Source of the DNA: Octopus sinensis
Lineage: Eukaryota
Assembly: GCF_006345805.1 (NCBI RefSeq)
Contig: NW_021826533.1
Coordinates: forward strand, 1 to 12,658
DNA: 12,658 nucleotides
Reading direction: 5' to 3'
The translations under genes were made by a program, and so were the position numbers. This document shows, piece by piece, positions 1 to 12,658 of this stretch; the stretch's first letter is position 1, and each line of letters opens with the position of its first letter. Below the pieces are notes generated by a model. The model did no database searches. It was not told where the DNA came from and saw only the letters and a list, made by a program, of their open reading frames with translations.

Positions 1-269
1 GTGGTGGTTGTCATCGTCGTCGTCGTCGTCGTCGTGGCAGCGGCGGTGGCGGCGGCGGTGGTGGCAGCGGGTGTGTTGGTGGCGATGATGGCGGCGGTTG
101 TTCTTGGTGGTGGTGGTGGCGGCAGTGGTGTTGGTGGCAACGATGGTAGTGATGGTGGCGGCTGTTCTTGGTGATGGTGGTGGTGGTGGTGGTTGTGGAG
201 ATGGCGGTTGAAGTGTTGGTGATGATGGCGGCGGTTTTTCTCGGTGGTGATGGTGGTAGTGGTGGTAGA
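1..269. repeat. GC-rich cryptic trinucleotide repeat (GGT/GGC/GTC/GAT)n
   Basis: Runs of gtc, ggc, ggt and gat triplets from the window start to ~269. Confidence 0.9.
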
Positions 270-270
270 G

Positions 271-395
271 GATTTCAGTCGGTTTCGACGATGAGTATTC
301 AATTATCTGATCCATTGAATTACCTGCTCTGAAACGACATACAAGTGGCTGAGTAAACAGACATGTGTACCCATAATGTAATTTCCAAGCAATCT
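271..395 (-). mobile_element. Diverged 3' fragment of family C SINE
   Basis: The reverse complement (aattacattatgggtacacatgtctgt..tactcagccacttg..gagcagg..ctcatcgtcgaaaccgac) aligns by eye to the 3' half of the copy at 4848-5153 (aattacattaagggtaggtatgtctgtggagtactcagccacttg..gagcagg..ctcgtcgtcgtaaccgac). Confidence 0.75.
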
Positions 396-446: not shown

Positions 447-588
447 TGTGGTTAAGAAGCCCGCTTTGAAACCATGTGGTTTCGGGTTCAGTCTCATTGC
501 GTGTTATCTTGGACGAGTGTCTTCTTGTATGATAGTTTCGGGCCAACCAATGCTGGAGTGTGTGTGTGTGTGTGGTGTGTGTGTGTGT

Positions 589-642
<54 letters not shown>

Positions 643-840
643 TTGCCACCGCTCCACCGCTCGACTTGTGTTAATTTGTTTGCGTCCCTGTAAATCAGCG
701 GTTCGACAAAATAGACCAATGTAATATGTACCACTCTTTAAAAAAATACAGATAAAATACTGAGGTGGATTTGGTCAACTAAATCCCTTGAAGGCGGTGC
801 TTCAGCATGGCCGCAGTTCAATGACTGAAACAAGTAAAAA
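447..840 (+). mobile_element. Family B tRNA-derived SINE (CORE-type, octopus OR2-like), diverged
   Basis: Same layout as 8728-9130: head gtggttaagaagc..gggttcagtc, CORE-like cttggacgagtgtctt, internal (TG)n, tail ggcggtgcttcagcatggccgcagttcaatgactgaaacaagtaaaa. The OR2/CORE label is from recall. Confidence 0.8.
558..640. repeat. (TG)n microsatellite inside the family B SINE
   Basis: Direct reading. Confidence 0.95.
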
Positions 841-1152
841 ACAAAAATGAAATGATATAAAATAAAATAAAATAAAATAAAGGAGCGGCGCGTTAGGATC
901 GAACCTAAATCCCCTGAATATAGTGCCTCAGCATGGCCGCAGTCCAATGACTGAAACAAGTAAAAGAAAAATGAAACAAAATAAAATAAAATACAAATAA
1001 AGGAGCGACGCGTTAGGATCGAGCCTAAATCCCTTGAATGTTGTGCCTCATCATGGCCGCAGTCCAATGACTGAAACAAGTAAAAAAGAAATTTTAATAC
1101 AATATATAAAATACAATATATAAAATGAAGAAGCGACGCGCTAGGATCGAAC
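779..1152 (+). repeat. Three-copy tandem repeat (126, 120 and 128 bp units): SINE-B tail + A-rich linker + antisense tRNA T-arm
   Basis: Units start with ctaaatccc at 779, 905 and 1025. Each contains catggccgcagt.caatgactgaaacaagtaaaa and ends in gcg.cgcg.taggatcga.c. Confidence 0.9.
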
Positions 1153-1206
1153 CTAGAACCGACTGGTTACGACTCGAAATTACGATCCATTCGACCATAC
1201 TGCACC
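1133..1206 (-). pseudogene. Degenerate tRNA-like element (tRNA pseudogene or SINE head)
   Basis: Minus strand reads ggtgcagtaTGGTCGAATGG..gtcgtaa..ctaGGTTCGATCCtag. It has A-box and B-box motifs, a CTAGG/CCTAG T-stem and a T-run shortly downstream. Acceptor and anticodon stems pair poorly, so it is not a functional tRNA. Confidence 0.6.
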
Positions 1207-2513: not shown

Positions 2514-2943
2514 GGATCTTTTCGGTTTGATCGGCAGTTTTTTCTAGCGGTGTCATATGAAATTGTCACCCATAATTATGACCCTAGTATCGATCTATTG
2601 CATTTCAATCTGTTTTAGGGCTTGTTAGGGTTAGGGTTAGGGTTAGGGTTAGAGGTGGGGGCAAGGGTATCTTTTTTTCTTCAGAAATGTAAATAAACCC
2701 AATCTGTTTCTTAAACGAGGGACACCTTCATACGGCACAGAATATTTTCACCTCAATTGACGTCATTGATTGGTTGAAATTGCAGAAATTGAAGAAAAAA
2801 AATCCTACAAACTATAGAATTTTCTCAATACAGCCAAGAGAAAAAGATGTTTTATAAACACATTCTACCAGTATACGAAGTTTAAAAGTGTTTAGTTACG
2901 TGGAAATTATTTTTAAAAACTGCCTTTCAAACCGAAAAGAACC
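2514..2943. mobile_element. 430-bp MITE with 29-bp TIRs and an 8-bp target site duplication
   Basis: Left TIR ggatcttttcggtttgatcggcagttttt (2514-2542) matches the reverse complement of aaaaactgcctttcaaaccgaaaagaacc (2915-2943) at 26/29. Flanked by acagtcac (2506-2513) and acagttac (2944-2951), 7/8 identical. Confidence 0.8.
2615..2652 (+). repeat. Interstitial telomere-type (TTAGGG)n inside the MITE
   Basis: Four perfect tandem TTAGGG at 2625-2648, followed by TTAG, plus one more copy at 2615-2620. Confidence 0.9.
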
Positions 2944-3260
2944 ACAGTTACTTTACCAAATACTTTATTATTTTACGTAATAAATTATAAAGCAAAGATA
3001 ATGTATTTCAACAGGTATAAAGTAACAAAAGTGATCTAAAATTTTAAATTTCATTAAAATTTCATATTAATTTATGCTTGAAACACCGTCTTGATATTGA
3101 CAATGTTATTTTACTAAATTCTTCACAATTTACCAAAATTTATTACATCAAAAGTAACGTATTTAAACTGAAATATGGTAACTAAAGGATTAGAGTGATC
3201 TAAAATAAAACCTTCCATCAAAATATTAATTTGTTTAAAACACCATTTGATAATTATAAA

Positions 3261-4030
3261 GGCGGCGAGCCGGCAGAATCGTTAGCACGCCGGGCGAAAT
3301 GCATAGCGGTATTTCGTCTGCCACTACGTTCTGAGTTCAAATTCCGCCGAGGTCGACTTTGCCTTTCATCCTTTCGGGGTCGATAAATTAAGTACCAGTT
3401 ACGCACTGGGGTCGATGTAATTGACTTAATACCTATGTCTGTCCTTGTTTGTCCCCTCTGTGTTTAGCCCCTTGTGGGTAATAAAGAAATAGGTATTTCG
3501 TCTGCCACTACGTTCTGAGTTCAAATTCCGCCGAGGTCGATTCTGCCTTTCATCCTTTCGGGGTCGATTAAATAAGTACCAATTACGCATTGAGGTCGAT
3601 ATAATCGACTTAATCCGTTTGTCTGTCCTTGTTTCTCCTCTCTGTGTTTAGCTCCTTGTGGGTAGTAAAGAAATAGGTATTTCGTCTACTGCTACGTTCT
3701 GAGTTCAAATTCAACCGAGGTCGACTTTGCCTTTCATCCTTTCGGGGTCGATTAAATAAGTACCAGTTACGCACTGGGGTTGATATAATCGACTTAATCC
3801 GTTTGTCTGTCCTTGTTTCTCCTCTCTGTGTTTAGCCCCTTGTGGGTAGTAAAGAAATAGAAATAGGTATTTCATCTGCCGTTACGTCCCGATTTCAAAT
3901 TCCGCCGAGGTCGAATATACCTATCATCCTCACGAGGTCGATAAATTAAGTACCAGTTACGTACTGGAGTGGATCTAATCGACAAGCCCCATCACCAAAT
4001 TTCAGGCCTTGTGCCTATAATAGAAAGGAC
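3261..4030 (+). mobile_element. Family A tRNA-derived SINE with three internal 184-190 bp tandem units
   Basis: Head ggcggcgagccggcagaatcgttagc (A-box-like). Units begin ggtatttc at 3308, 3492, 3676 and 3866, each with B-box-like gagttcaaattc and central ggtcgactttgcctttcatcctttcggggtcga. Tail is ggccttgtgcctataatagaaag. Candidate TSD attataaa at 3253-3260 and 4041-4048. Confidence 0.9.
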
Positions 4031-4057
4031 ATTTTTAATCATTATAAAGTTATTTAA

Positions 4058-4268
4058 GGCTGCAAGCTGGTAGAATCGTTAGCACGCCGGGCGAAGTACT
4101 TACAAGCATTATCGCCCCACCGTACGATCTGAGTTTAAATTCCGAAGAGCTCAACATCGCTTTTCATCTTTTCGGGGTCGATAAAATAAGTACTAATTGG
4201 GGGAATCGATTAGATCGATTACCACGCCTTCCCCGAAACTATTGGCCTCGTATCAAAATTTTAAGCCA
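4058..4268 (+). mobile_element. Family A SINE, older monomeric copy
   Basis: ggctgcaagctggtagaatcgttagcacgccgggcgaa..gagtttaaattcc..ttttcatcttttcggggtcgataaaataagtac; no 184-bp repeat unit. Confidence 0.85.
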
Positions 4269-5950: not shown

Positions 5951-6090
5951 GAACATTATTATTAAGAAGTGAATTATTTTCATGAACCCGTTATTCCGGC
6001 AATAGTCTTCGGTTTCTTCAGATTTTTGCTAATATTTATAATCATAAATCCTATAATTACGTGATATTAACCGAAAGCACGTGATGTTAT

Positions 6091-6222
6091 TTAATTTATC
6101 CTCTTTCAAAAGGACAAAATGAAAATCAGCCCTCAGCGAGATTTGAACTCAGGACGTTAAAACAGACGAGATGCCGTTAAGCATTTCGCTCGGCGTGCTA
6201 ACGATTCCGCCAGCTCGCCGCC
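6091..6222 (-). mobile_element. Family A SINE, 5' part
   Basis: atttgaactcaggacg..gcatttcgctcggcgtgctaacgattccgccagctcgccgcc is the reverse complement of the family A head; more diverged toward 6091. Confidence 0.85.
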
Positions 6223-6289
6223 TTACGCCGCCTTAAACTAATGACCCAAATATTAACTAATGTTAAACTAACCGAATTAGAATATGCTT

Positions 6290-6866
6290 GTCTACTCTAG
6301 GCACAAGGCCCGAAATTTTGGGGGAGGGGGCCAGTCGATTAGATCGACGCCAGTACGTAACTGGTAATCAATTGATCGACTCCGAAAGGATGAAAGGCAA
6401 AGTTGACCCTGGTGGAATCTGAACTCAGGACGTAAAGTCAGACGAAATACCTATTTCTTTACTACCCACAAGGGGCTAAACACAGAGAGGACAAACAAGG
6501 ACAGACAAATGGATTAAGTCAATTATATCGACCCCAGTGCGTACCTGGTACTTATTTAATCGACCCCGAAAGGATGAAAGGCAAAGTCGACCTCGGTGGA
6601 ATTTGAACTCAGAATGTAGCGGCAGACAAAATACCTATTTCTTTACTACCCACAAGGGGCTAAACACAGAGAGGACAAACAAGGACAAACAAATGGATTA
6701 AGTCAATTATATCGACCCCAGTGCGTACCTGGTACTTATTTAATCGACCCCGAAAGGATGAAAGGCAAAGTCGACCTCGGTGGAATTTGAACTCAGAACG
6801 TAACGGCAGGCGAAATACAGCAACGCATCTCGCCCGGCGTACTGACGATTCTGCCAGCTCGCCGCC
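6290..6866 (-). mobile_element. Family A SINE with two internal 184-bp tandem units
   Basis: Tail ctactctaggcacaaggcccgaaatttt at ~6292; units ctatttctttactacccacaagggg..aaatac at 6451-6634 and 6635-6818; head ends gccagctcgccgcc at 6866. Confidence 0.9.
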
Positions 6867-7060
6867 TTACGCCGCCTTAAAATAATGCCCCGAATATGAA
6901 CTAACATTAAACAACCGAATTAGAATATGGTATAAGAAAGTTGAAAGGAAGAAAAAAAAATCTTGTTTATTGAACAGCATAATTGAAATATAGGGCGTAG
7001 GAGAAACGTTTCGATAATATGGAATTAAATTCGAAAGATAAAACAAAAATAAGACAAAAT

Positions 7061-7110
7061 AACAACAGCAATAACAACAACAACAACAACAGCAGCAGCA
7101 GCAGCAACAG
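7061..7110. repeat. (AAC)n/(CAG)n trinucleotide microsatellite
   Basis: Direct reading. Confidence 0.9.
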
Positions 7111-7334
7111 CGTCAATAAATGACGTTCTATGTTAATTTAATAAATTCGCTGTTAATACAATTACTTTTCCTTGGTAGTTAGTTACTCTGTCATATCTTG
7201 GTCTTATTAAACATGGCTTCCCTTTCTTTTGACTTCTTGTTTTTGTTTTTTTCTAATATTCCTTGGTATTTTATGAAAAAGAAAGAAAAAAGAAAAGAAA
7301 AGAACGAAAAGAAAAGAAACGGTTTCATCGTCGA

Positions 7335-7406
7335 CATTGTTATTGTTGTTGCTGTTGTGTTGTTGCTGTCGGTGATAATTACGATGACGATGATGACGAT
7401 GGTGAC

Positions 7407-7466
<60 letters not shown>

Positions 7467-7585
7467 GATGATGACGACGACGACGACGACGACGATAATG
7501 ATATTTTTTAATGCTATTGTTTCGTGTTATTGATATTTATTGTCGTTATTTTCGTTGTTGTTGTTGTTGTTATTGTAGTTGTTTT
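7335..7585. repeat. Compound (GTT)n/(GAT)n/(GAC)n trinucleotide tract
   Basis: Direct reading; long (GAT)n at ~7380-7500. Confidence 0.92.
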
Positions 7586-7949: not shown

Positions 7950-8092
7950 TTGGTCACTTGTCTGTTCATCTTTCACGGGTTGATAGAATTAGTACCAGTT
8001 GAATACTCGGGTCGGTTTACTCGATTATAGCCTTTCTCCTGACCCGGCCTCAAATATGTGGCTTTGTGCCTATAACAGAAATCAATATTATA
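7950..8092 (+). mobile_element. Old family A SINE 3' part; its tail is the target of the next insertion
   Basis: ttcatctttcacgggttgatagaattagtaccagttgaatactcgggtcg..ggctttgtgcctataacagaa is a diverged family A body and tail. Confidence 0.65.
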
Positions 8093-8496
8093 TTCTTTTC
8101 TATTCTAGGCACTAGGCCCGAAATGTTGGGGGGGGGGGGGAGCCAGTCGATTAGATCGACCTCAGAACGCAACTGGTACTTAATTTATCGACCCTGAAAG
8201 GATGAAAAGCAAAGTCGACCTTGGCGGAATTTGTACTCAGAACGTAAAGACAGACGAAATACCTATTTCTTTACTACCCACAAGGGGCTAAACACAGAGG
8301 GGACAAACAAGGACAGATACACGGATTAAGTCGATTATATCGACCCCAGTGCGTAACTGGTACTTAATTTGTCGACCCCGAAAGGATGAAAGGCAAAGTC
8401 GACCTCGGCGGAATTTGAACTCAGAACGTAACGGCAGACGAAACACCGCTACGCATTTTGCCTGGCGTGCTAACGATTCTGCCAGCTCGCCGTCTT
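8093..8496 (-). mobile_element. Family A SINE with one 184-bp extra unit and a perfect 16-bp TSD
   Basis: TSD agaaatcaatattata at 8077-8092 and 8497-8512; unit at 8263-8446; tail ttcttttctattctaggcac and head gccagctcgccgtc both present. Confidence 0.93.
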
Positions 8497-8523
8497 AGAA
8501 ATCAATATTATAGTTACAACAAA

Positions 8524-8700
8524 GGCAGCGAGATGGCAGAATAGTTAGCATGCTGAGTTCGAATTTCGCCGAGGTCAACTTTACCTTTCATCCTTTCGGG
8601 ATCGATAAATTAAGTACCAGTTACGCACTGGGGTCGATGTAATCGACTTACTTCCTCAGCTTCGAGATTGCTGGCTTTGTGCTAAAGTTTGAATATAATG
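8524..8700 (+). mobile_element. Family A SINE with a ~41-bp internal deletion between the A and B boxes
   Basis: ggcagcgagatggcagaatagttagcatgc|tgagttcgaatttcgccgaggtc; the segment equivalent to 3291-3331 is absent. Confidence 0.85.
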
Positions 8701-8727
8701 TTGTCCTTGTTTATAAAAATCTTTCTC

Positions 8728-8889
8728 GGCGTAGGAGTGGCTGTGTGGTAAGACGCTTGCTTCCCAACCACATGGCTCCGGGTTCAGCCTCACTGCGTGG
8801 CACCTTGGGCAAGCGTCTTCTACAATAACCTCGGGTAGACCAAAGCTTTGTGAGTGAATTTGGGAGACGGAAACTCAAAGAAACCAGTC

Positions 8890-8933
<44 letters not shown>

Positions 8934-9130
8934 TTTCTGTGTTTGTCCTCCAATTATAGCTTGTCAACCGATGTTGATGTGGTTACGCCCCTGTAACTTA
9001 GCGGTTTAGCAAACGAAACCTATAGAATAAGTGCTAGGCTTATAAAAAATAAATCCTGGGGTCGATTTGTTCGCCTAAAGGCGGTGCTCCAGCATGGCCG
9101 CAGTCAAATGAGTGAAACAAATAAACGAAT
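8728..9130 (+). mobile_element. Family B SINE (CORE-type, OR2-like), full length, internal (TA)n at ~8891-8930
   Basis: Head ggcgtaggagTGGCTGTGTGGtaag..ccGGGTTCAGCC; CORE-like gtggcaccttgggcaagcgtctt; tail ggcggtgctccagcatggccgcagtcaaatgagtgaaacaa. Confidence 0.88.
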
Positions 9131-9580: not shown

Positions 9581-9702
9581 ACATACATACATACATACAT
9601 ACATACATACACACATATATATATACTATATATATATATATAAGATATAATATATATATATATATAATATTATATAGTATATATATATTATATATATATA
9701 TA
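9540..9702. repeat. Compound (CA)n-(CATA)n-(TA)n microsatellite
   Basis: Direct reading. Confidence 0.95.
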
Positions 9703-9744
9703 ACAAGTAAAGTGTTGTAAGGTACCGCACGAGTAGAATTATAT

Positions 9745-9912
9745 ATGAAAGAAGGTTTGAAAATGCAATTTTATGAGACTCGAACTCACACCTCCGTGAT
9801 TACGCGTCGCGGTGCTCTGAACCATTAAGCTAAACCGGTTCAGGCACCGCGACGCGTAATCACGAGGTGTGAGTTCGAGTCTCATAAAATTGCATTTCAA
9901 ACCTTCTTTCAT
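9745..9912. repeat. Long inverted repeat: 79-bp and 76-bp arms with a 13-nt spacer
   Basis: Left arm 9745-9823 and right arm 9837-9912 are exact reverse complements apart from three single-base gaps in the right arm. The spacer is attaagctaaacc. Confidence 0.95.
9764..9836 (-). pseudogene. tRNA-Thr(CGT)-like Pol III unit forming the left arm and loop of the palindrome
   Basis: Minus strand: A-box TAGCTTAATGG, D-stem GCTT/GAGC, anticodon stem CGCGA/TCACG (one mismatch) with loop CG-CGT-AA, variable loop GAGGT, T-arm GTGAG-TTCGAGT-CTCAT, then TTTT. The acceptor stem does not pair beyond 2 bp and position 33 is not U. Confidence 0.7.
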
Positions 9913-10873
9913 CTTTATATATAAAAAACTGAGAACGTGTGTGTGTCTGTCTGTCTGTGTGTTTCCCCCTAAACTTGAGAACTACACAACCAATTTCATT
10001 CAAATTATACACATGCATTACTAGTCCGCGGGAGTGTCATCGGCAAAAAAAATGTTCTTGCCTAGAGCGAGCCCATGCAATATCATATCTTCCTCCACTA
10101 TTTCAGTATTACGTGTTAAAAGTGAAACAAAAACGCTTCTCTATTTTATGTCAGATACTTTCATTTTAACAATAAAAATAATAATAACAATTCAATTATA
10201 TGTAGTATGTAATAATTAAAATCAAACTAAAGTATAATATAATCGTAACATAACAAAAGTAAAAATAGCAATTGGCATAAAATTGCAACAATGACTTGAA
10301 CTTGAATAAGTGGTTTCACATGAATGAGAATAAATTAAAAATAAAATTAGCGTGCAGAAATAGAATAGTCCAGAGGGATAATAAAAAATTAAGTTAAAGA
10401 AAAGACTATTGTCTATAAAGTATACAATGTAGAGAAAAAAGAAGATTTGAACACATAGAGGACTATGAAAGATATCTAATCAGAGGCGGTAAATTCGCTA
10501 CAATAGAAGCAAGTTTCGAGTCAACGGAGCGTGCAAGGGAGTACTCGACTCGAACTTGCAAAGTGGAAATATTTTATTTTTACCTTTACATCTGGGACGT
10601 AGGACGTCCCGGAAAAAAATTTTAAGCTGGATTGTAGCCACACTTCTATACAAGAGGGAGAACAAGATACAATGATCGAAATTACAGAGACGGGCTAACA
10701 ATTCCAGTCTGTTAGATATTTTGAGTATTGTTATCACTAGCGATATCAAGATATAACTTTTATTTTGTATTTTATTGTGTAGATGTATATATATAGATGT
10801 ACATGTAATATGTACACATGTATACATGCACTAGCACTATGACCCGGCAACGACGGCAATGAGTTTCAGCTCT
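9912..10873 (+). mobile_element. Probable non-autonomous Helitron
   Basis: Starts A|TCtttatatataaaa, then short (TG)/(TCTG)n and an aactacacaaccaatttcattcaaatt motif like DINE-1/Lep1-type Helitron heads (recall). Near the end is a degenerate hairpin ccggc-aac-gacgg (10844-10856) followed by cagctc, where CTAG would be expected. No TSD. Confidence 0.55.
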
Positions 10874-11734: not shown

Positions 11735-12658
11735 TGCTTTAGATGTATTTATTGCAAGAAGCAGCTAGGTTTCATTCTGTAACATTTTTACATAGTTCAA
11801 CCTACGACAAGTTAATGTGTGAAAAACAAATAAGGAATTTGGAAAGAAGTTTCTATACTCCTTACTCTTTTACTCTTTTACTTGTTTCAGTCATTTGACT
11901 GCGGCCATCCTGGAGCACCGCCTTTAGTCGAGCAAAACGACCCCGGGACTTATCCTTTGTAAGCCTAGTACTTATTCTATCGGTCTCTTTTGCCGAACCG
12001 CTAAGTTACGGGGACCTAAACGCACCAGCATCGGTTGTCAAGCGATGTTGGAGGTGGGGAGACAAACAGTCACACAAACATATACACACCACATAATATA
12101 TATATACTATATATAATAATATATATATATATAATATATATATATATATCTATGCGACTTGCTTCTTTCAGTTTCCGTCTACCAATCCACTCCAGGCATT
12201 GGTCGGCCCGAGGCTATAGTAGAGAAGACACTTACCCAAGGTGCCTCGCAGCGGGACTGAACCCGGAACCATGTGGTTGGTAAGCAAGCTACTTACCACA
12301 CCGGCTATAGGGGTTCGCCAGAATGAAATGGTAAGCAAGAAATCCATAGATAAAACGGTTGAGAAACCCTGCTTTAGATGATGTGTTGATATGTATTGCA
12401 AGAAACAACTTGGTTCTTTCTCTAACATTTTTACATACTTCAACCTACGACAAGTTAATGTGTGAATAATGAATAAAATCTATAAAGTAGTTTTTAAACA
12501 TTGAATGGGGGTTCACCAGAATAAAATTGTGATCAAAGGAGTCCTAGATTTAAAAAATGCTTGAGACCCCTGCTTTAGATGTATGTATTGGTAGCTATCG
12601 CAAGGAACAGCTAGATTTCTTTTCTCTAACATTTTTACATAGTTCAACCTACGACAAG
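11735..12658. repeat. ~200-bp tandem repeat (at least 3 units, runs off the window); first unit interrupted by a SINE
   Basis: tgctttagatg at 11735, 12370 and 12571. The block taacatttttacata.ttcaacctacgacaag(ttaatgtgtgaa) is at 11780, 12423 and 12627, and ggggttc.ccagaat.aaat is at ~12310 and ~12507. Confidence 0.85.
11861..12305 (-). mobile_element. Family B SINE (CORE-type, OR2-like), internal (TA)n at ~12095-12150
   Basis: Tail (actctttt)n-cttgtttcagtcatttgactgcggcc; CORE-like agacacttacccaaggtgcc; head gactgaacccggaaccatgtggttgg..cttaccaca. Confidence 0.9.

What the first reader, a model, noticed from the sequence alone, without database searches (positions are those of the whole stretch)
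9745..9912. 168-bp near-perfect palindrome built from a tRNA-Thr(CGT)-like Pol III unit, with the A-box in the loop
The arms (79 and 76 bp) differ only by three single-base gaps and have no substitutions, so the structure is very young, homogenised, or an artefact. The minus strand carries a tRNA-like unit with A-box TAGCTTAATGG spanning the loop, B-box GTTCGAGTC and a TTTT terminator. The plus strand carries the mirror B-box (~9872-9880) and TTT, and the loop gives an A-box-like TAAGCTAAACCGG. The element could therefore be a bidirectional Pol III cassette making complementary short RNAs, or a ~76-bp hairpin in any read-through transcript (Dicer or ADAR substrate), or a cruciform. A fold-back inversion primed at aacc/ggtt could explain its origin. 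This is the most unusual structure in the window; function is inference.
Basis: partly seen in the sequence, partly recalled or inferred. Interest (0 to 1): 0.7.

Follow-up and report, generated by a model that had tools for sequence, protein, structure and literature searches.

The report
Fold-back copy of a tRNA-like fragment
A 168-base near-perfect palindrome really is there, but it is most likely a one-off DNA copying accident that duplicated a broken tRNA-like gene fragment in reverse in repeat-rich non-coding animal DNA, not a working two-way RNA gene.

Summary
Arms 9745-9823 (79 nt) and 9837-9912 (76 nt) flank a 13-nt spacer. They differ by three one-base gaps and no substitutions. The predicted hairpin is far beyond chance (RNA -135.7 kcal/mol, z = -25.8).

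The minus strand of left arm plus spacer is one continuous tRNA-like sequence: Rfam tRNA, 31.4 bits, model positions 6-65. It lacks the 5' acceptor strand. ARAGORN calls tRNA-Thr(CGT) only after I added a hypothetical acceptor strand. The right arm starts inside the D-loop and gives no tRNA match, so it is the derived copy. All three gaps are deletions in that arm.

The flanks are unique and not palindromic. No other copy exists in the window. The palindrome abuts AT-rich microsatellites.

Best explanation (about 0.6): a single fold-back or template-switch inverted duplication during replication or break repair, using AACC/GGTT microhomology.

The "bidirectional Pol III cassette making complementary RNAs" is not supported. 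Divergent transcripts from a palindrome centre are identical, not complementary. The plus strand also lacks a good A box and a TTTT terminator.

Genome-wide copy number, the orthologous site and expression could not be tested, because no collection on hand held this genome. Interest is low.

The parts
9745..9823 (-). Left arm (79 nt). On the minus strand it is the tRNA-like unit from the D-loop to the 3' end, plus a 3' trailer (CATTTTCAAACCTTCTTTCAT). Inferred to be the original copy.
   Evidence: arm alignment; the Rfam tRNA match runs without a break from the spacer into this arm.
9824..9836 (.). 13-nt spacer ATTAAGCTAAACC. On the minus strand it holds tRNA positions about 6-17 (the TT of the acceptor stem, TA, the 5' strand of the D-stem and part of the D-loop).
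9837..9912 (+). Right arm (76 nt). An inverted copy of the left arm that starts in the D-loop (GGTTCAG) and carries three one-base deletions. Inferred to be the derived copy.
   Evidence: gaps only, no substitutions. (no tRNA match on this arm).
9771..9834 (-). Rfam tRNA (RF00005) match, 31.4 bits, model positions 6-65 of 71. The 5' acceptor strand is absent.
   Evidence: In one search, ARAGORN calls tRNA-Thr(CGT) only after a hypothetical acceptor strand CAATTTT is added, and the fold still has a C.A mismatch in the anticodon stem and G at position 33.
9822..9832 (-). A-box-like TAGCTTAATGG (10/11 to TRGCNNAGTGG).
   Evidence: Such matches are common: 46 matches of 9/11 or better in the window, both strands.
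9776..9786 (-). B-box-like AGTTCGAGTCT (9/11 to GGTTCGANNCC).
9872..9882 (+). Mirror copy of the B-box-like motif in the right arm.
9760..9763 (-). TTTT two bases after the would-be discriminator base; a possible Pol III terminator for the minus-strand unit. The mirror run on the plus strand (9895-9897) is only TTT.
9833..9840 (.). AACCGGTT, an 8-bp self-complementary sequence at the spacer/right-arm junction. AACC recurs at 9820-9823. Candidate microhomology for the fold-back or template switch.
   Evidence: Read directly from the sequence.
9739..9744 (.). TTATAT directly left of the palindrome. The same hexamer lies at 9915-9920, two bases beyond the right end. A weak candidate target-site duplication in AT-rich DNA, probably chance.

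Best explanation
A pre-existing Pol III-type, tRNA-Thr(CGT)-like sequence was partly copied in reverse orientation in one event, by fold-back (snap-back) priming or a replication template switch. That sequence is either a decayed tRNA gene or the head of a tRNA-derived SINE, and it lacks the first 5 nt of the acceptor stem. A 3' DNA end paired at the short AACC/GGTT microhomology in or next to the D-loop. It copied about 76 nt back along the tRNA-like unit and its 3' trailer, and then rejoined unrelated sequence at 9912/9913. This happened either in place, or in a displaced strand that was then captured at a break in the neighbouring AT-rich microsatellite. Shown: the palindrome; which arm is original and which is the copy; the sharp ends; the unique flanks. 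Inferred: the copying mechanism; that the three one-base deletions come from low-fidelity copying (or from base-calling error); that the element has no function of its own. The product is a young, probably neutral structural mutation. The minus-strand unit keeps plausible A and B boxes and a TTTT, so it may still give a short tRNA-like Pol III transcript. The long hairpin would form only in a Pol II read-through transcript, or as a DNA hairpin or cruciform during replication.
For: 1. Direction of copying. The Rfam tRNA match runs without a break through the spacer and left arm on the minus strand. The right arm starts inside the D-loop and gives no tRNA match. 2. All three gaps are deletions in the right arm relative to the more tRNA-like left arm: TTTT to TTT, D-stem GAGC lost, CACGG to CACG. 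3. Three indels with no substitutions do not fit ordinary decay after the duplication. If substitutions outnumber indels 5-20 fold (general knowledge), the chance that the first three events are all indels is 0.0001-0.005. They fit slippage-prone synthesis; Pol theta frameshifts in runs are described in PMC11292364. 4. The arms are identical at 76 of 76 aligned sites (95% upper bound on difference 3.9%), whereas SINE copies in the same window are only 67-92% alike. The event is therefore younger than those SINE insertions. 5. Microhomology is available at the junction: AACCGGTT at 9833-9840 and AACC at 9820-9823. 6. Geometry matches documented events. Template-switch mutations of 28 to 83 nt create perfect hairpins in primates (PMC10710096). 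Yeast break repair gives inverted double insertions from one locus with about 50 bp of overlap, 2-20 bp between junctions and 2-11 bp of microhomology (PMC11724301). 7. Context: structure-prone AT-rich microsatellites lie about 40 bp to the left. 8. No second copy of either arm occurs in the 12.6-kb window.
Against: There is no outgroup or ancestral allele, so the event is inferred from one sequence. The genome-wide copy number of the arm is unknown, because no collection available here holds this genome. At 76 nt the copy is at the long end of published local fold-back insertions (mostly 5-34 bp in yeast), although it is within the range of template-switch events and distant inverted insertions. 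The CC at 9835-9836 is explained neither by the tRNA model nor by the copied arm. The raw reads were not seen.
Confidence: 0.6

Rival explanations
1. It is one copy of a palindromic mobile element family (MITE-like or fold-back element) whose long terminal inverted repeats are built from a tRNA-like sequence.
For: The whole element is an inverted repeat with sharp ends in AT-rich DNA. A TTATAT hexamer lies on both sides. Palindromic MITEs such as Made1 exist and give hairpin RNAs (PMC1784062, listed).
Against: There is no second copy or fragment in the window, although other repeat families recur many times there. The right-hand TTATAT is offset by 2 nt and lies in TA-rich DNA, so it is weak as a target-site duplication. 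No TA or other direct repeat abuts both ends. The two arms are not equivalent: one continues into the spacer as a single tRNA-like unit and the other starts in the D-loop. That is the signature of a copying event rather than of two transposase-binding ends. The ends resemble no transposon terminus that I recall (memory only).
Confidence: 0.1
2. A reverse transcriptase snapped back during retroposition of a Pol III tRNA-like or SINE RNA. The first-strand cDNA reached a 5'-truncated end, folded back and copied itself, and the hairpin cDNA was fixed as a palindrome.
For: The geometry fits: the RNA 5' end is at the centre and the RNA 3' ends face outward. The unit is 5'-truncated at tRNA position about 6. 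The site is AT-rich. The window is full of tRNA-derived SINEs.
Against: There is no poly(A), short tandem repeat or LINE-like tail at the outer ends, and no clean target-site duplication. The copied RNA would have to run past its own TTTT terminator at 9760-9763.
Confidence: 0.1
3. It is an assembly or sequencing artefact: a fold-back chimeric read or a mis-polished consensus. In that case only one arm exists in the real genome.
For: The arms differ only by one-base gaps, and two of the three gaps are in short runs of the same base. This is a typical long-read error pattern. Hairpin-forming DNA is error-prone in library preparation and sequencing (general knowledge).
Against: Read-level fold-back chimeras are palindromic out to the end of the read. 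Here the symmetry stops sharply at 9745 and 9912, and both flanks are unique and non-complementary apart from unrelated AC/GT microsatellites. The centre is tRNA D-arm sequence, not an adapter. No gap (N run) or contig end is nearby. A consensus would need two independent chimeric junctions.
Confidence: 0.1
4. It is a functional RNA gene: a hairpin precursor of small RNAs (miRNA or endo-siRNA), a double-stranded RNA substrate for ADAR, or the reader's bidirectional Pol III cassette.
For: The hairpin is very stable. The minus-strand unit keeps A box, B box and TTTT. Template-switch hairpins can become miRNA genes (PMC10710096).
Against: All Rfam miRNA matches are generic hairpin hits far below their gathering scores: 39.5 against 73, 36.8 against 100, 33.1 against 67.5. 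No arm sequence occurs in the held supplementary files of the octopus miRNA survey. Divergent Pol III transcripts would be identical, not complementary, and the plus-strand unit lacks an A box and a terminator. A TTTT in each first-transcribed arm blocks Pol III read-through. A perfect 76-bp stem is much longer than the roughly 35-bp stem of miRNA precursors. There is no evidence of transcription or conservation.
Confidence: 0.05

Closest known systems
Template-switch mutations (TSMs) that create reverse-complement repeats and perfect hairpins in one event (Monttinen and Loytynoja 2022, PMC8794818; Monttinen et al. 2023, PMC10710096)
   Same: A reverse-complement copy lies next to its source, the stem is perfect, both ends are sharp, and the length is within the published 28-83 nt examples. 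The hairpin is created from sequence that previously had none.
   Different: Those cases were inferred from ancestral reconstruction across species, and no outgroup was available here. The source here is a tRNA-like Pol III unit. The stem (76 bp) is longer than the 30-55 nt hairpins those authors counted as miRNA-like.
Fold-back templated insertions at double-strand breaks and 'distant inverted insertions' (Yu et al. [quoted passage not shown]
   Same: Two inverted, overlapping copies of one locus are separated by a short gap (13 nt here; 2-20 bp in yeast), with a few bases of microhomology at the inversion junction. One-base slippage errors are expected from the polymerases involved.
   Different: Local fold-back insertions seen experimentally are mostly 5-34 bp. 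The enzymes involved cannot be identified from sequence. This would be a germline event fixed in an animal genome, not a yeast or cancer-cell product.
Made1 MITEs, the source of the human mir-548 family (Piriyapongsa and Jordan 2007, PMC1784062)
   Same: A short, almost wholly palindromic element able to fold into a long hairpin if transcribed.
   Different: Made1 is a multicopy transposon remnant with TA target-site duplications and mariner-type ends. No copies, no clean duplication and no transposon-type ends are seen here, and the two arms are not equivalent.
tRNA genes, tRNA pseudogenes and the tRNA-derived heads of SINEs (for octopus: Ohshima and Okada 1994, cited in PMC4824008)
   Same: D-arm, anticodon arm and T-arm are recognisable. 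A and B boxes are present and a TTTT follows the 3' end.
   Different: There is no 5' acceptor strand. The anticodon stem has a C.A mismatch and position 33 is G. No LINE-type tail is present. The unit is unrelated in sequence to the SINE families in the same window.

Membership tests
Functional tRNA gene | Complete cloverleaf with a paired 7-bp acceptor stem | tested here: not met
   ARAGORN finds no tRNA in the window or in the isolated region at default settings. The Rfam match covers model positions 6-65 only. The bases in front of TA (ACCGGTT) do not pair with AAAATTG.
Functional tRNA gene | 7-nt anticodon loop with U33 and an intact anticodon stem | tested here: not met
Functional tRNA gene | Internal A and B boxes and a downstream run of four or more T | tested here: met
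   Minus strand only: A box 10/11, B box 9/11, TTTT at 9760-9763. The plus-strand mirror has no A box of 9/11 or better and only TTT.
tRNA-derived SINE | tRNA-related head with Pol III boxes | tested here: met
tRNA-derived SINE | LINE-related or A-rich / simple-repeat 3' tail, and target-site duplications | tested here: not met
   The outer ends are ...CAAACCTTCTTTCAT with no tail. The only flanking repeat is the offset TTATAT hexamer in AT-rich DNA.
tRNA-derived SINE | Many dispersed copies in the genome | not testable with these tools
   There is no other copy in the window. No collection on hand holds this genome.
MITE / fold-back transposon | Terminal inverted repeats | tested here: met
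   Trivially met, because the whole element is an inverted repeat.
MITE / fold-back transposon | Target-site duplication of fixed length directly abutting both ends | tested here: inconclusive
   No TA or other repeat abuts both ends. TTATAT lies at 9739-9744 and, two bases beyond the right end, at 9915-9920.
MITE / fold-back transposon | Multicopy family with the same termini | not testable with these tools
   None in the window. The genome was not available.
miRNA / hairpin small-RNA gene | Match to a curated family at its gathering score, or evidence of processed small RNAs | tested here: not met
   MIR5020 39.5 against 73, mir-2071 36.8 against 100, mir-240 33.1 against 67.5. No arm string occurs in the held supplements of the octopus miRNA survey. 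Expression itself is not testable here.
Template-switch / fold-back inverted duplication | A reverse-complement copy adjacent to its source, with one arm continuous with the surrounding original sequence | tested here: met
   Left arm plus spacer form one continuous tRNA-like unit, and the right arm starts in the D-loop.
Template-switch / fold-back inverted duplication | Microhomology at the switch point | tested here: inconclusive
   AACC/GGTT (AACCGGTT at 9833-9840; AACC at 9820-9823) is available. The exact switch point cannot be fixed without the ancestral allele, and CC 9835-9836 is unexplained.
Template-switch / fold-back inverted duplication | An ancestral or orthologous allele that lacks the inverted copy | not testable with these tools
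   No related genome could be reached.
Read-level fold-back chimera (artefact) | Symmetry continuing out to a read or contig end, or adapter sequence at the centre | tested here: not met
   The flanks are not complementary, the centre is tRNA D-arm sequence, and there are no N runs or contig ends nearby.

The most novel reading that the evidence does not exclude
The palindrome is one member of an undescribed family of tRNA-derived palindromic elements in this (probably cephalopod) genome. Its members would spread as units and supply long perfect double-stranded RNA hairpins, feeding ADAR editing or small-RNA pathways, with a residual Pol III promoter at the centre.
Probability: 0.07. Interest if true: 0.55.

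Novelty: new member of a known kind. Interest (0 to 1): 0.2.

Why it matters
If the reading is right, this is a clean natural example of how one fold-back or template-switch event creates a long perfect hairpin from ordinary sequence. Here the source is a Pol III tRNA-like unit next to structure-prone AT-rich repeats. Such events are the proposed raw material for new hairpin RNA genes, and they are potential fragile sites. As a single neutral instance it adds little new knowledge. It would matter more if whole-genome data showed a family of such elements, or RNA from the hairpin.

Tried and rejected
1. Looking for other copies through pseudo-proteins. The 57-aa ORF that spans the palindrome (9739-9912, minus) is not on record and has no homologues. 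As a control, a 91-aa ORF across an abundant SINE of the window also found nothing. Four further window ORFs are not on record. The protein collections therefore do not hold non-coding ORFs of this genome, and these negatives say nothing about copy number.

2. Exact-pattern scans.
- Metagenome contigs, 24-mer of T-arm plus acceptor: 0 hits.
- Metagenome contigs, 20-mer of the anticodon arm: 1 hit, a chance match inside a GC-rich bacterial coding region with unrelated flanks.
- Viral contigs: 0 hits.
- Bacterial and archaeal genomes: 0 hits. This gives no sign of a prokaryotic tRNA source or contamination.

3. Relation to the SINE families in the window. Sensitive blastn of the arm against the rest of the window gave only chance 8-14-mers.

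4. A larger, older degenerate palindrome around the core. This was rejected, because the flanks align only through AC/GT microsatellites.

5. miRNA family membership was rejected; all hits are below gathering scores.

6. A mitochondrial tRNA reading (because of the A/T-rich acceptor strand) was rejected. The D-loop GG and the GTTCGAGTC T-loop are canonical, and ARAGORN in mitochondrial mode also needs the added acceptor strand.

7. Confirming the organism by searching papers for SINE sequence strings: 0 papers. The cephalopod or octopus assignment rests only on my recollection of octopus SINE sequences and is untested.

Full report
**Context**

The window is non-coding, repeat-rich eukaryotic DNA. 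It holds long microsatellites, trinucleotide runs, a short TTAGGG-type run, and several SINE-like families repeated in both orientations at 67-92% identity. No ORF looks like a gene. From memory, the SINEs resemble those of octopus genomes. I could not verify this with any tool, so the taxon is a lead only.

**The observation**

- Left arm 9745-9823 (79 nt), spacer 9824-9836 (13 nt), right arm 9837-9912 (76 nt).
- Aligning the left arm with the reverse complement of the right arm gives 76 matches, no substitutions and three one-base gaps. The gaps are one A of the A4 run 9760-9763, one C of CC 9793-9794, and T9816.
- The RNA fold is -135.7 kcal/mol against -38.3 +/- 3.8 for shuffles (z -25.8). 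The DNA fold is -91.8 kcal/mol (z -23.9).
- The symmetry ends sharply. The 45 nt on either side are no more complementary than shuffled sequence. Further out, only an (AC)n run on the left and a (GT/GTCT)n run on the right match.

**What the arms are**

Across all Rfam families, the only tRNA match in the window is on the minus strand at 9771-9834. It scores 31.4 bits (gathering score 29) and covers model positions 6-65 of 71. The match runs without a break from the spacer (TT, TA, the 5' strand of the D-stem, the D-loop) into the left arm (rest of the D-arm, anticodon arm, variable loop, T-arm).

ARAGORN finds no tRNA in the real sequence at default settings. When I added a hypothetical 5' acceptor strand complementary to AAAATTG, it called a 75-nt tRNA-Thr(CGT). 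That fold still has a C.A mismatch in the anticodon stem and G instead of U at position 33. The unit is therefore a 5'-truncated, decayed tRNA-like sequence: a pseudogene or a SINE head.

On the minus strand it keeps three Pol III features:
- an A box at 9822-9832 (10/11);
- a B box at 9776-9786 (9/11);
- a TTTT at 9760-9763, two bases after the would-be discriminator base.

It is unrelated to the SINE families in the window. No second copy of either arm exists in the window.

**Which arm is the copy**

The right arm, read on the plus strand, starts at GGTTCAG inside the D-loop and gives no tRNA match at all. Left arm plus spacer are therefore the continuous original, and the right arm is a reverse-complement copy of tRNA positions about 17 to the end plus 20 nt of trailer.

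All three gaps are deletions in the right arm, and each makes it less tRNA-like:
- the D-stem GAGC is lost;
- CACGG becomes CACG;
- TTTT becomes TTT.

**Age and the odd mutation pattern**

No substitutions in 76 sites puts a 95% upper bound of 3.9% on the difference between the arms. The SINE copies nearby differ by 8-33%, so the duplication is younger than those insertions.

Three indels and no substitutions are not what ordinary decay gives. If substitutions outnumber indels 5-20 fold (general knowledge), the chance that the first three events are all indels is 0.0001-0.005. The gaps are therefore either slippage errors made while the copy was synthesised, or base-calling errors in the assembly. 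Low-fidelity repair polymerases do this; Pol theta frameshifts in runs are described in PMC11292364.

**Mechanism**

The junction carries usable microhomology. AACCGGTT (9833-9840) is an 8-bp palindrome in its own right, and AACC recurs at 9820-9823. A 3' end finishing in GG or GGTT can pair 13 nt upstream and be extended back along the arm.

This is the geometry of three described processes:
- Template-switch mutations in replication. These create perfect hairpins in one step, with published events of 28 and up to 83 nt and more than 6,000 such hairpins in primates (PMC10710096; PMC8794818).
- Fold-back templated insertions at breaks (PMC11724301).

The closest described product is the "distant inverted insertion" seen in yeast. 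There, two inverted, overlapping fragments of one locus are captured at a break. The overlap has a median of 50 bp, the junctions are 2-20 bp apart, and the microhomology is 2-11 bp. Here the overlap is 76 bp and the gap is 13 nt.

I cannot tell whether the tRNA-like unit was native to this locus (local duplication) or whether the whole 168 bp was captured at a break in the AT-rich repeat. The TTATAT hexamers at 9739-9744 and 9915-9920 are too weak to decide. A reverse-transcriptase snap-back during retroposition gives the same geometry. It is listed as a rival, but there is no tail or clean target duplication, and the template RNA would have had to run past its own terminator.

[quoted passage not shown] fails on logic and on sequence:
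- In a palindrome, the minus-strand transcript of the left arm equals the plus-strand transcript of the right arm (both printed). Divergent transcription gives two nearly identical tRNA-sense RNAs, complementary only in their short overlapping leaders.
- The plus-strand unit has no A box of 9/11 or better, no tRNA match and only TTT.
- Pol III cannot make the full hairpin. It meets a TTTT inside the first arm on either strand (plus 9769-9772, minus 9886-9889).
- A putative minus-strand Pol III transcript (9840 to 9755) folds no better than shuffled sequence (z 0.15).

The long hairpin could arise only in a Pol II read-through transcript, for which there is no evidence here. The Rfam miRNA hits are generic hairpin matches far below threshold. 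The arm sequence is absent from the held supplements of the octopus miRNA survey.

**Artefact**

The gap-only differences fit long-read error. The structure as a whole does not fit a fold-back chimera:
- the symmetry stops after 76 bp on both sides;
- both flanks are unique;
- the centre is tRNA sequence, not adapter;
- no gap or contig end is nearby.

I give this about 0.1. Only the raw reads can settle it.

**Limits**

None of the collections I could search holds this genome. ORF look-ups, protein searches and exact-pattern scans of metagenomic, viral and prokaryotic contigs were all empty, apart from one chance match. A control search with a SINE-derived ORF was empty as well. Genome-wide copy number, orthologous sites and expression therefore remain untested.

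**Verdict**

This is a real, young, sharply bounded inverted duplication of a 5'-truncated tRNA-Thr(CGT)-like Pol III unit. It was most probably made in one fold-back or template-switch event and is most probably without function. It is a new instance of a known kind of mutation, and its interest is low unless whole-genome or RNA data show a family or a product.

Noticed in passing
window 3250-4260, 6085-6870, 8090-8660: Many copies and partial tandem arrays (unit about 184 bp) of one SINE-like family, in both orientations and 77-92% identical to each other. Two neighbouring copies in opposite orientation form a 98-nt inverted repeat at 93% (8327-8424 / 8553-8650). From memory they resemble octopus SINEs, which is the only basis for the suggested taxon.
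   Followed up: partly
window 447-560, 8720-9130, 11870-12300: A second tRNA-head SINE-like family (GGCGTAGGAGTGGCTGTGTGGTAAG...GGTTCAG...), with copies 70-76% identical, each next to an AT/TA or AC microsatellite.
   Followed up: no
window 779-1155: Three tandem units of about 125 bp, 84% identical, each ending in an A-rich (AAATA)n-like stretch.
   Followed up: no
window 2613-2660: A short interstitial run of TTAGGG-type telomere repeats (about 5 units, decaying into GGTGGGG).
   Followed up: no
window 1-290 and 7040-7580: Long imperfect trinucleotide runs: (GGT/GGC)n at the start of the window, then (CAA/CAG)n followed by (GAT/GAC)n. They give long pseudo-ORFs but show no sign of being a gene.
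   Followed up: no
window 10507-10557: A small inverted repeat, GCAAGTTTCGAGTC ... GACTCGAACTTGC, with a 24-nt spacer and a one-base gap in the T run. It also contains the B-box-like core TTCGAGTC. It is unrelated to the main palindrome beyond that 8-10-mer and is probably chance.
   Followed up: partly
window 10276-10287: An exact 12-mer, CATAAAATTGCA, shared with the T-stem/acceptor end of the tRNA-like unit (E about 0.05 in blastn-short). There is no similarity beyond it.
   Followed up: partly
window 11735-11858, 12307-12454, 12505-12658: Three copies (79-83% identical) of a repeat of about 115-150 bp (…CTGCTTTAGATG…TTTTTACATAGTTCAACCTACGACAAG). The last copy is cut by the end of the window.
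   Followed up: no
window 9612-9702: An AT-rich quasi-palindromic microsatellite (arms of 36 nt, 78% complementary) about 40 bp left of the palindrome, preceded by (AC)n and (ACAT)n. Structure-prone DNA of this kind could have stalled replication or broken here.
   Followed up: partly
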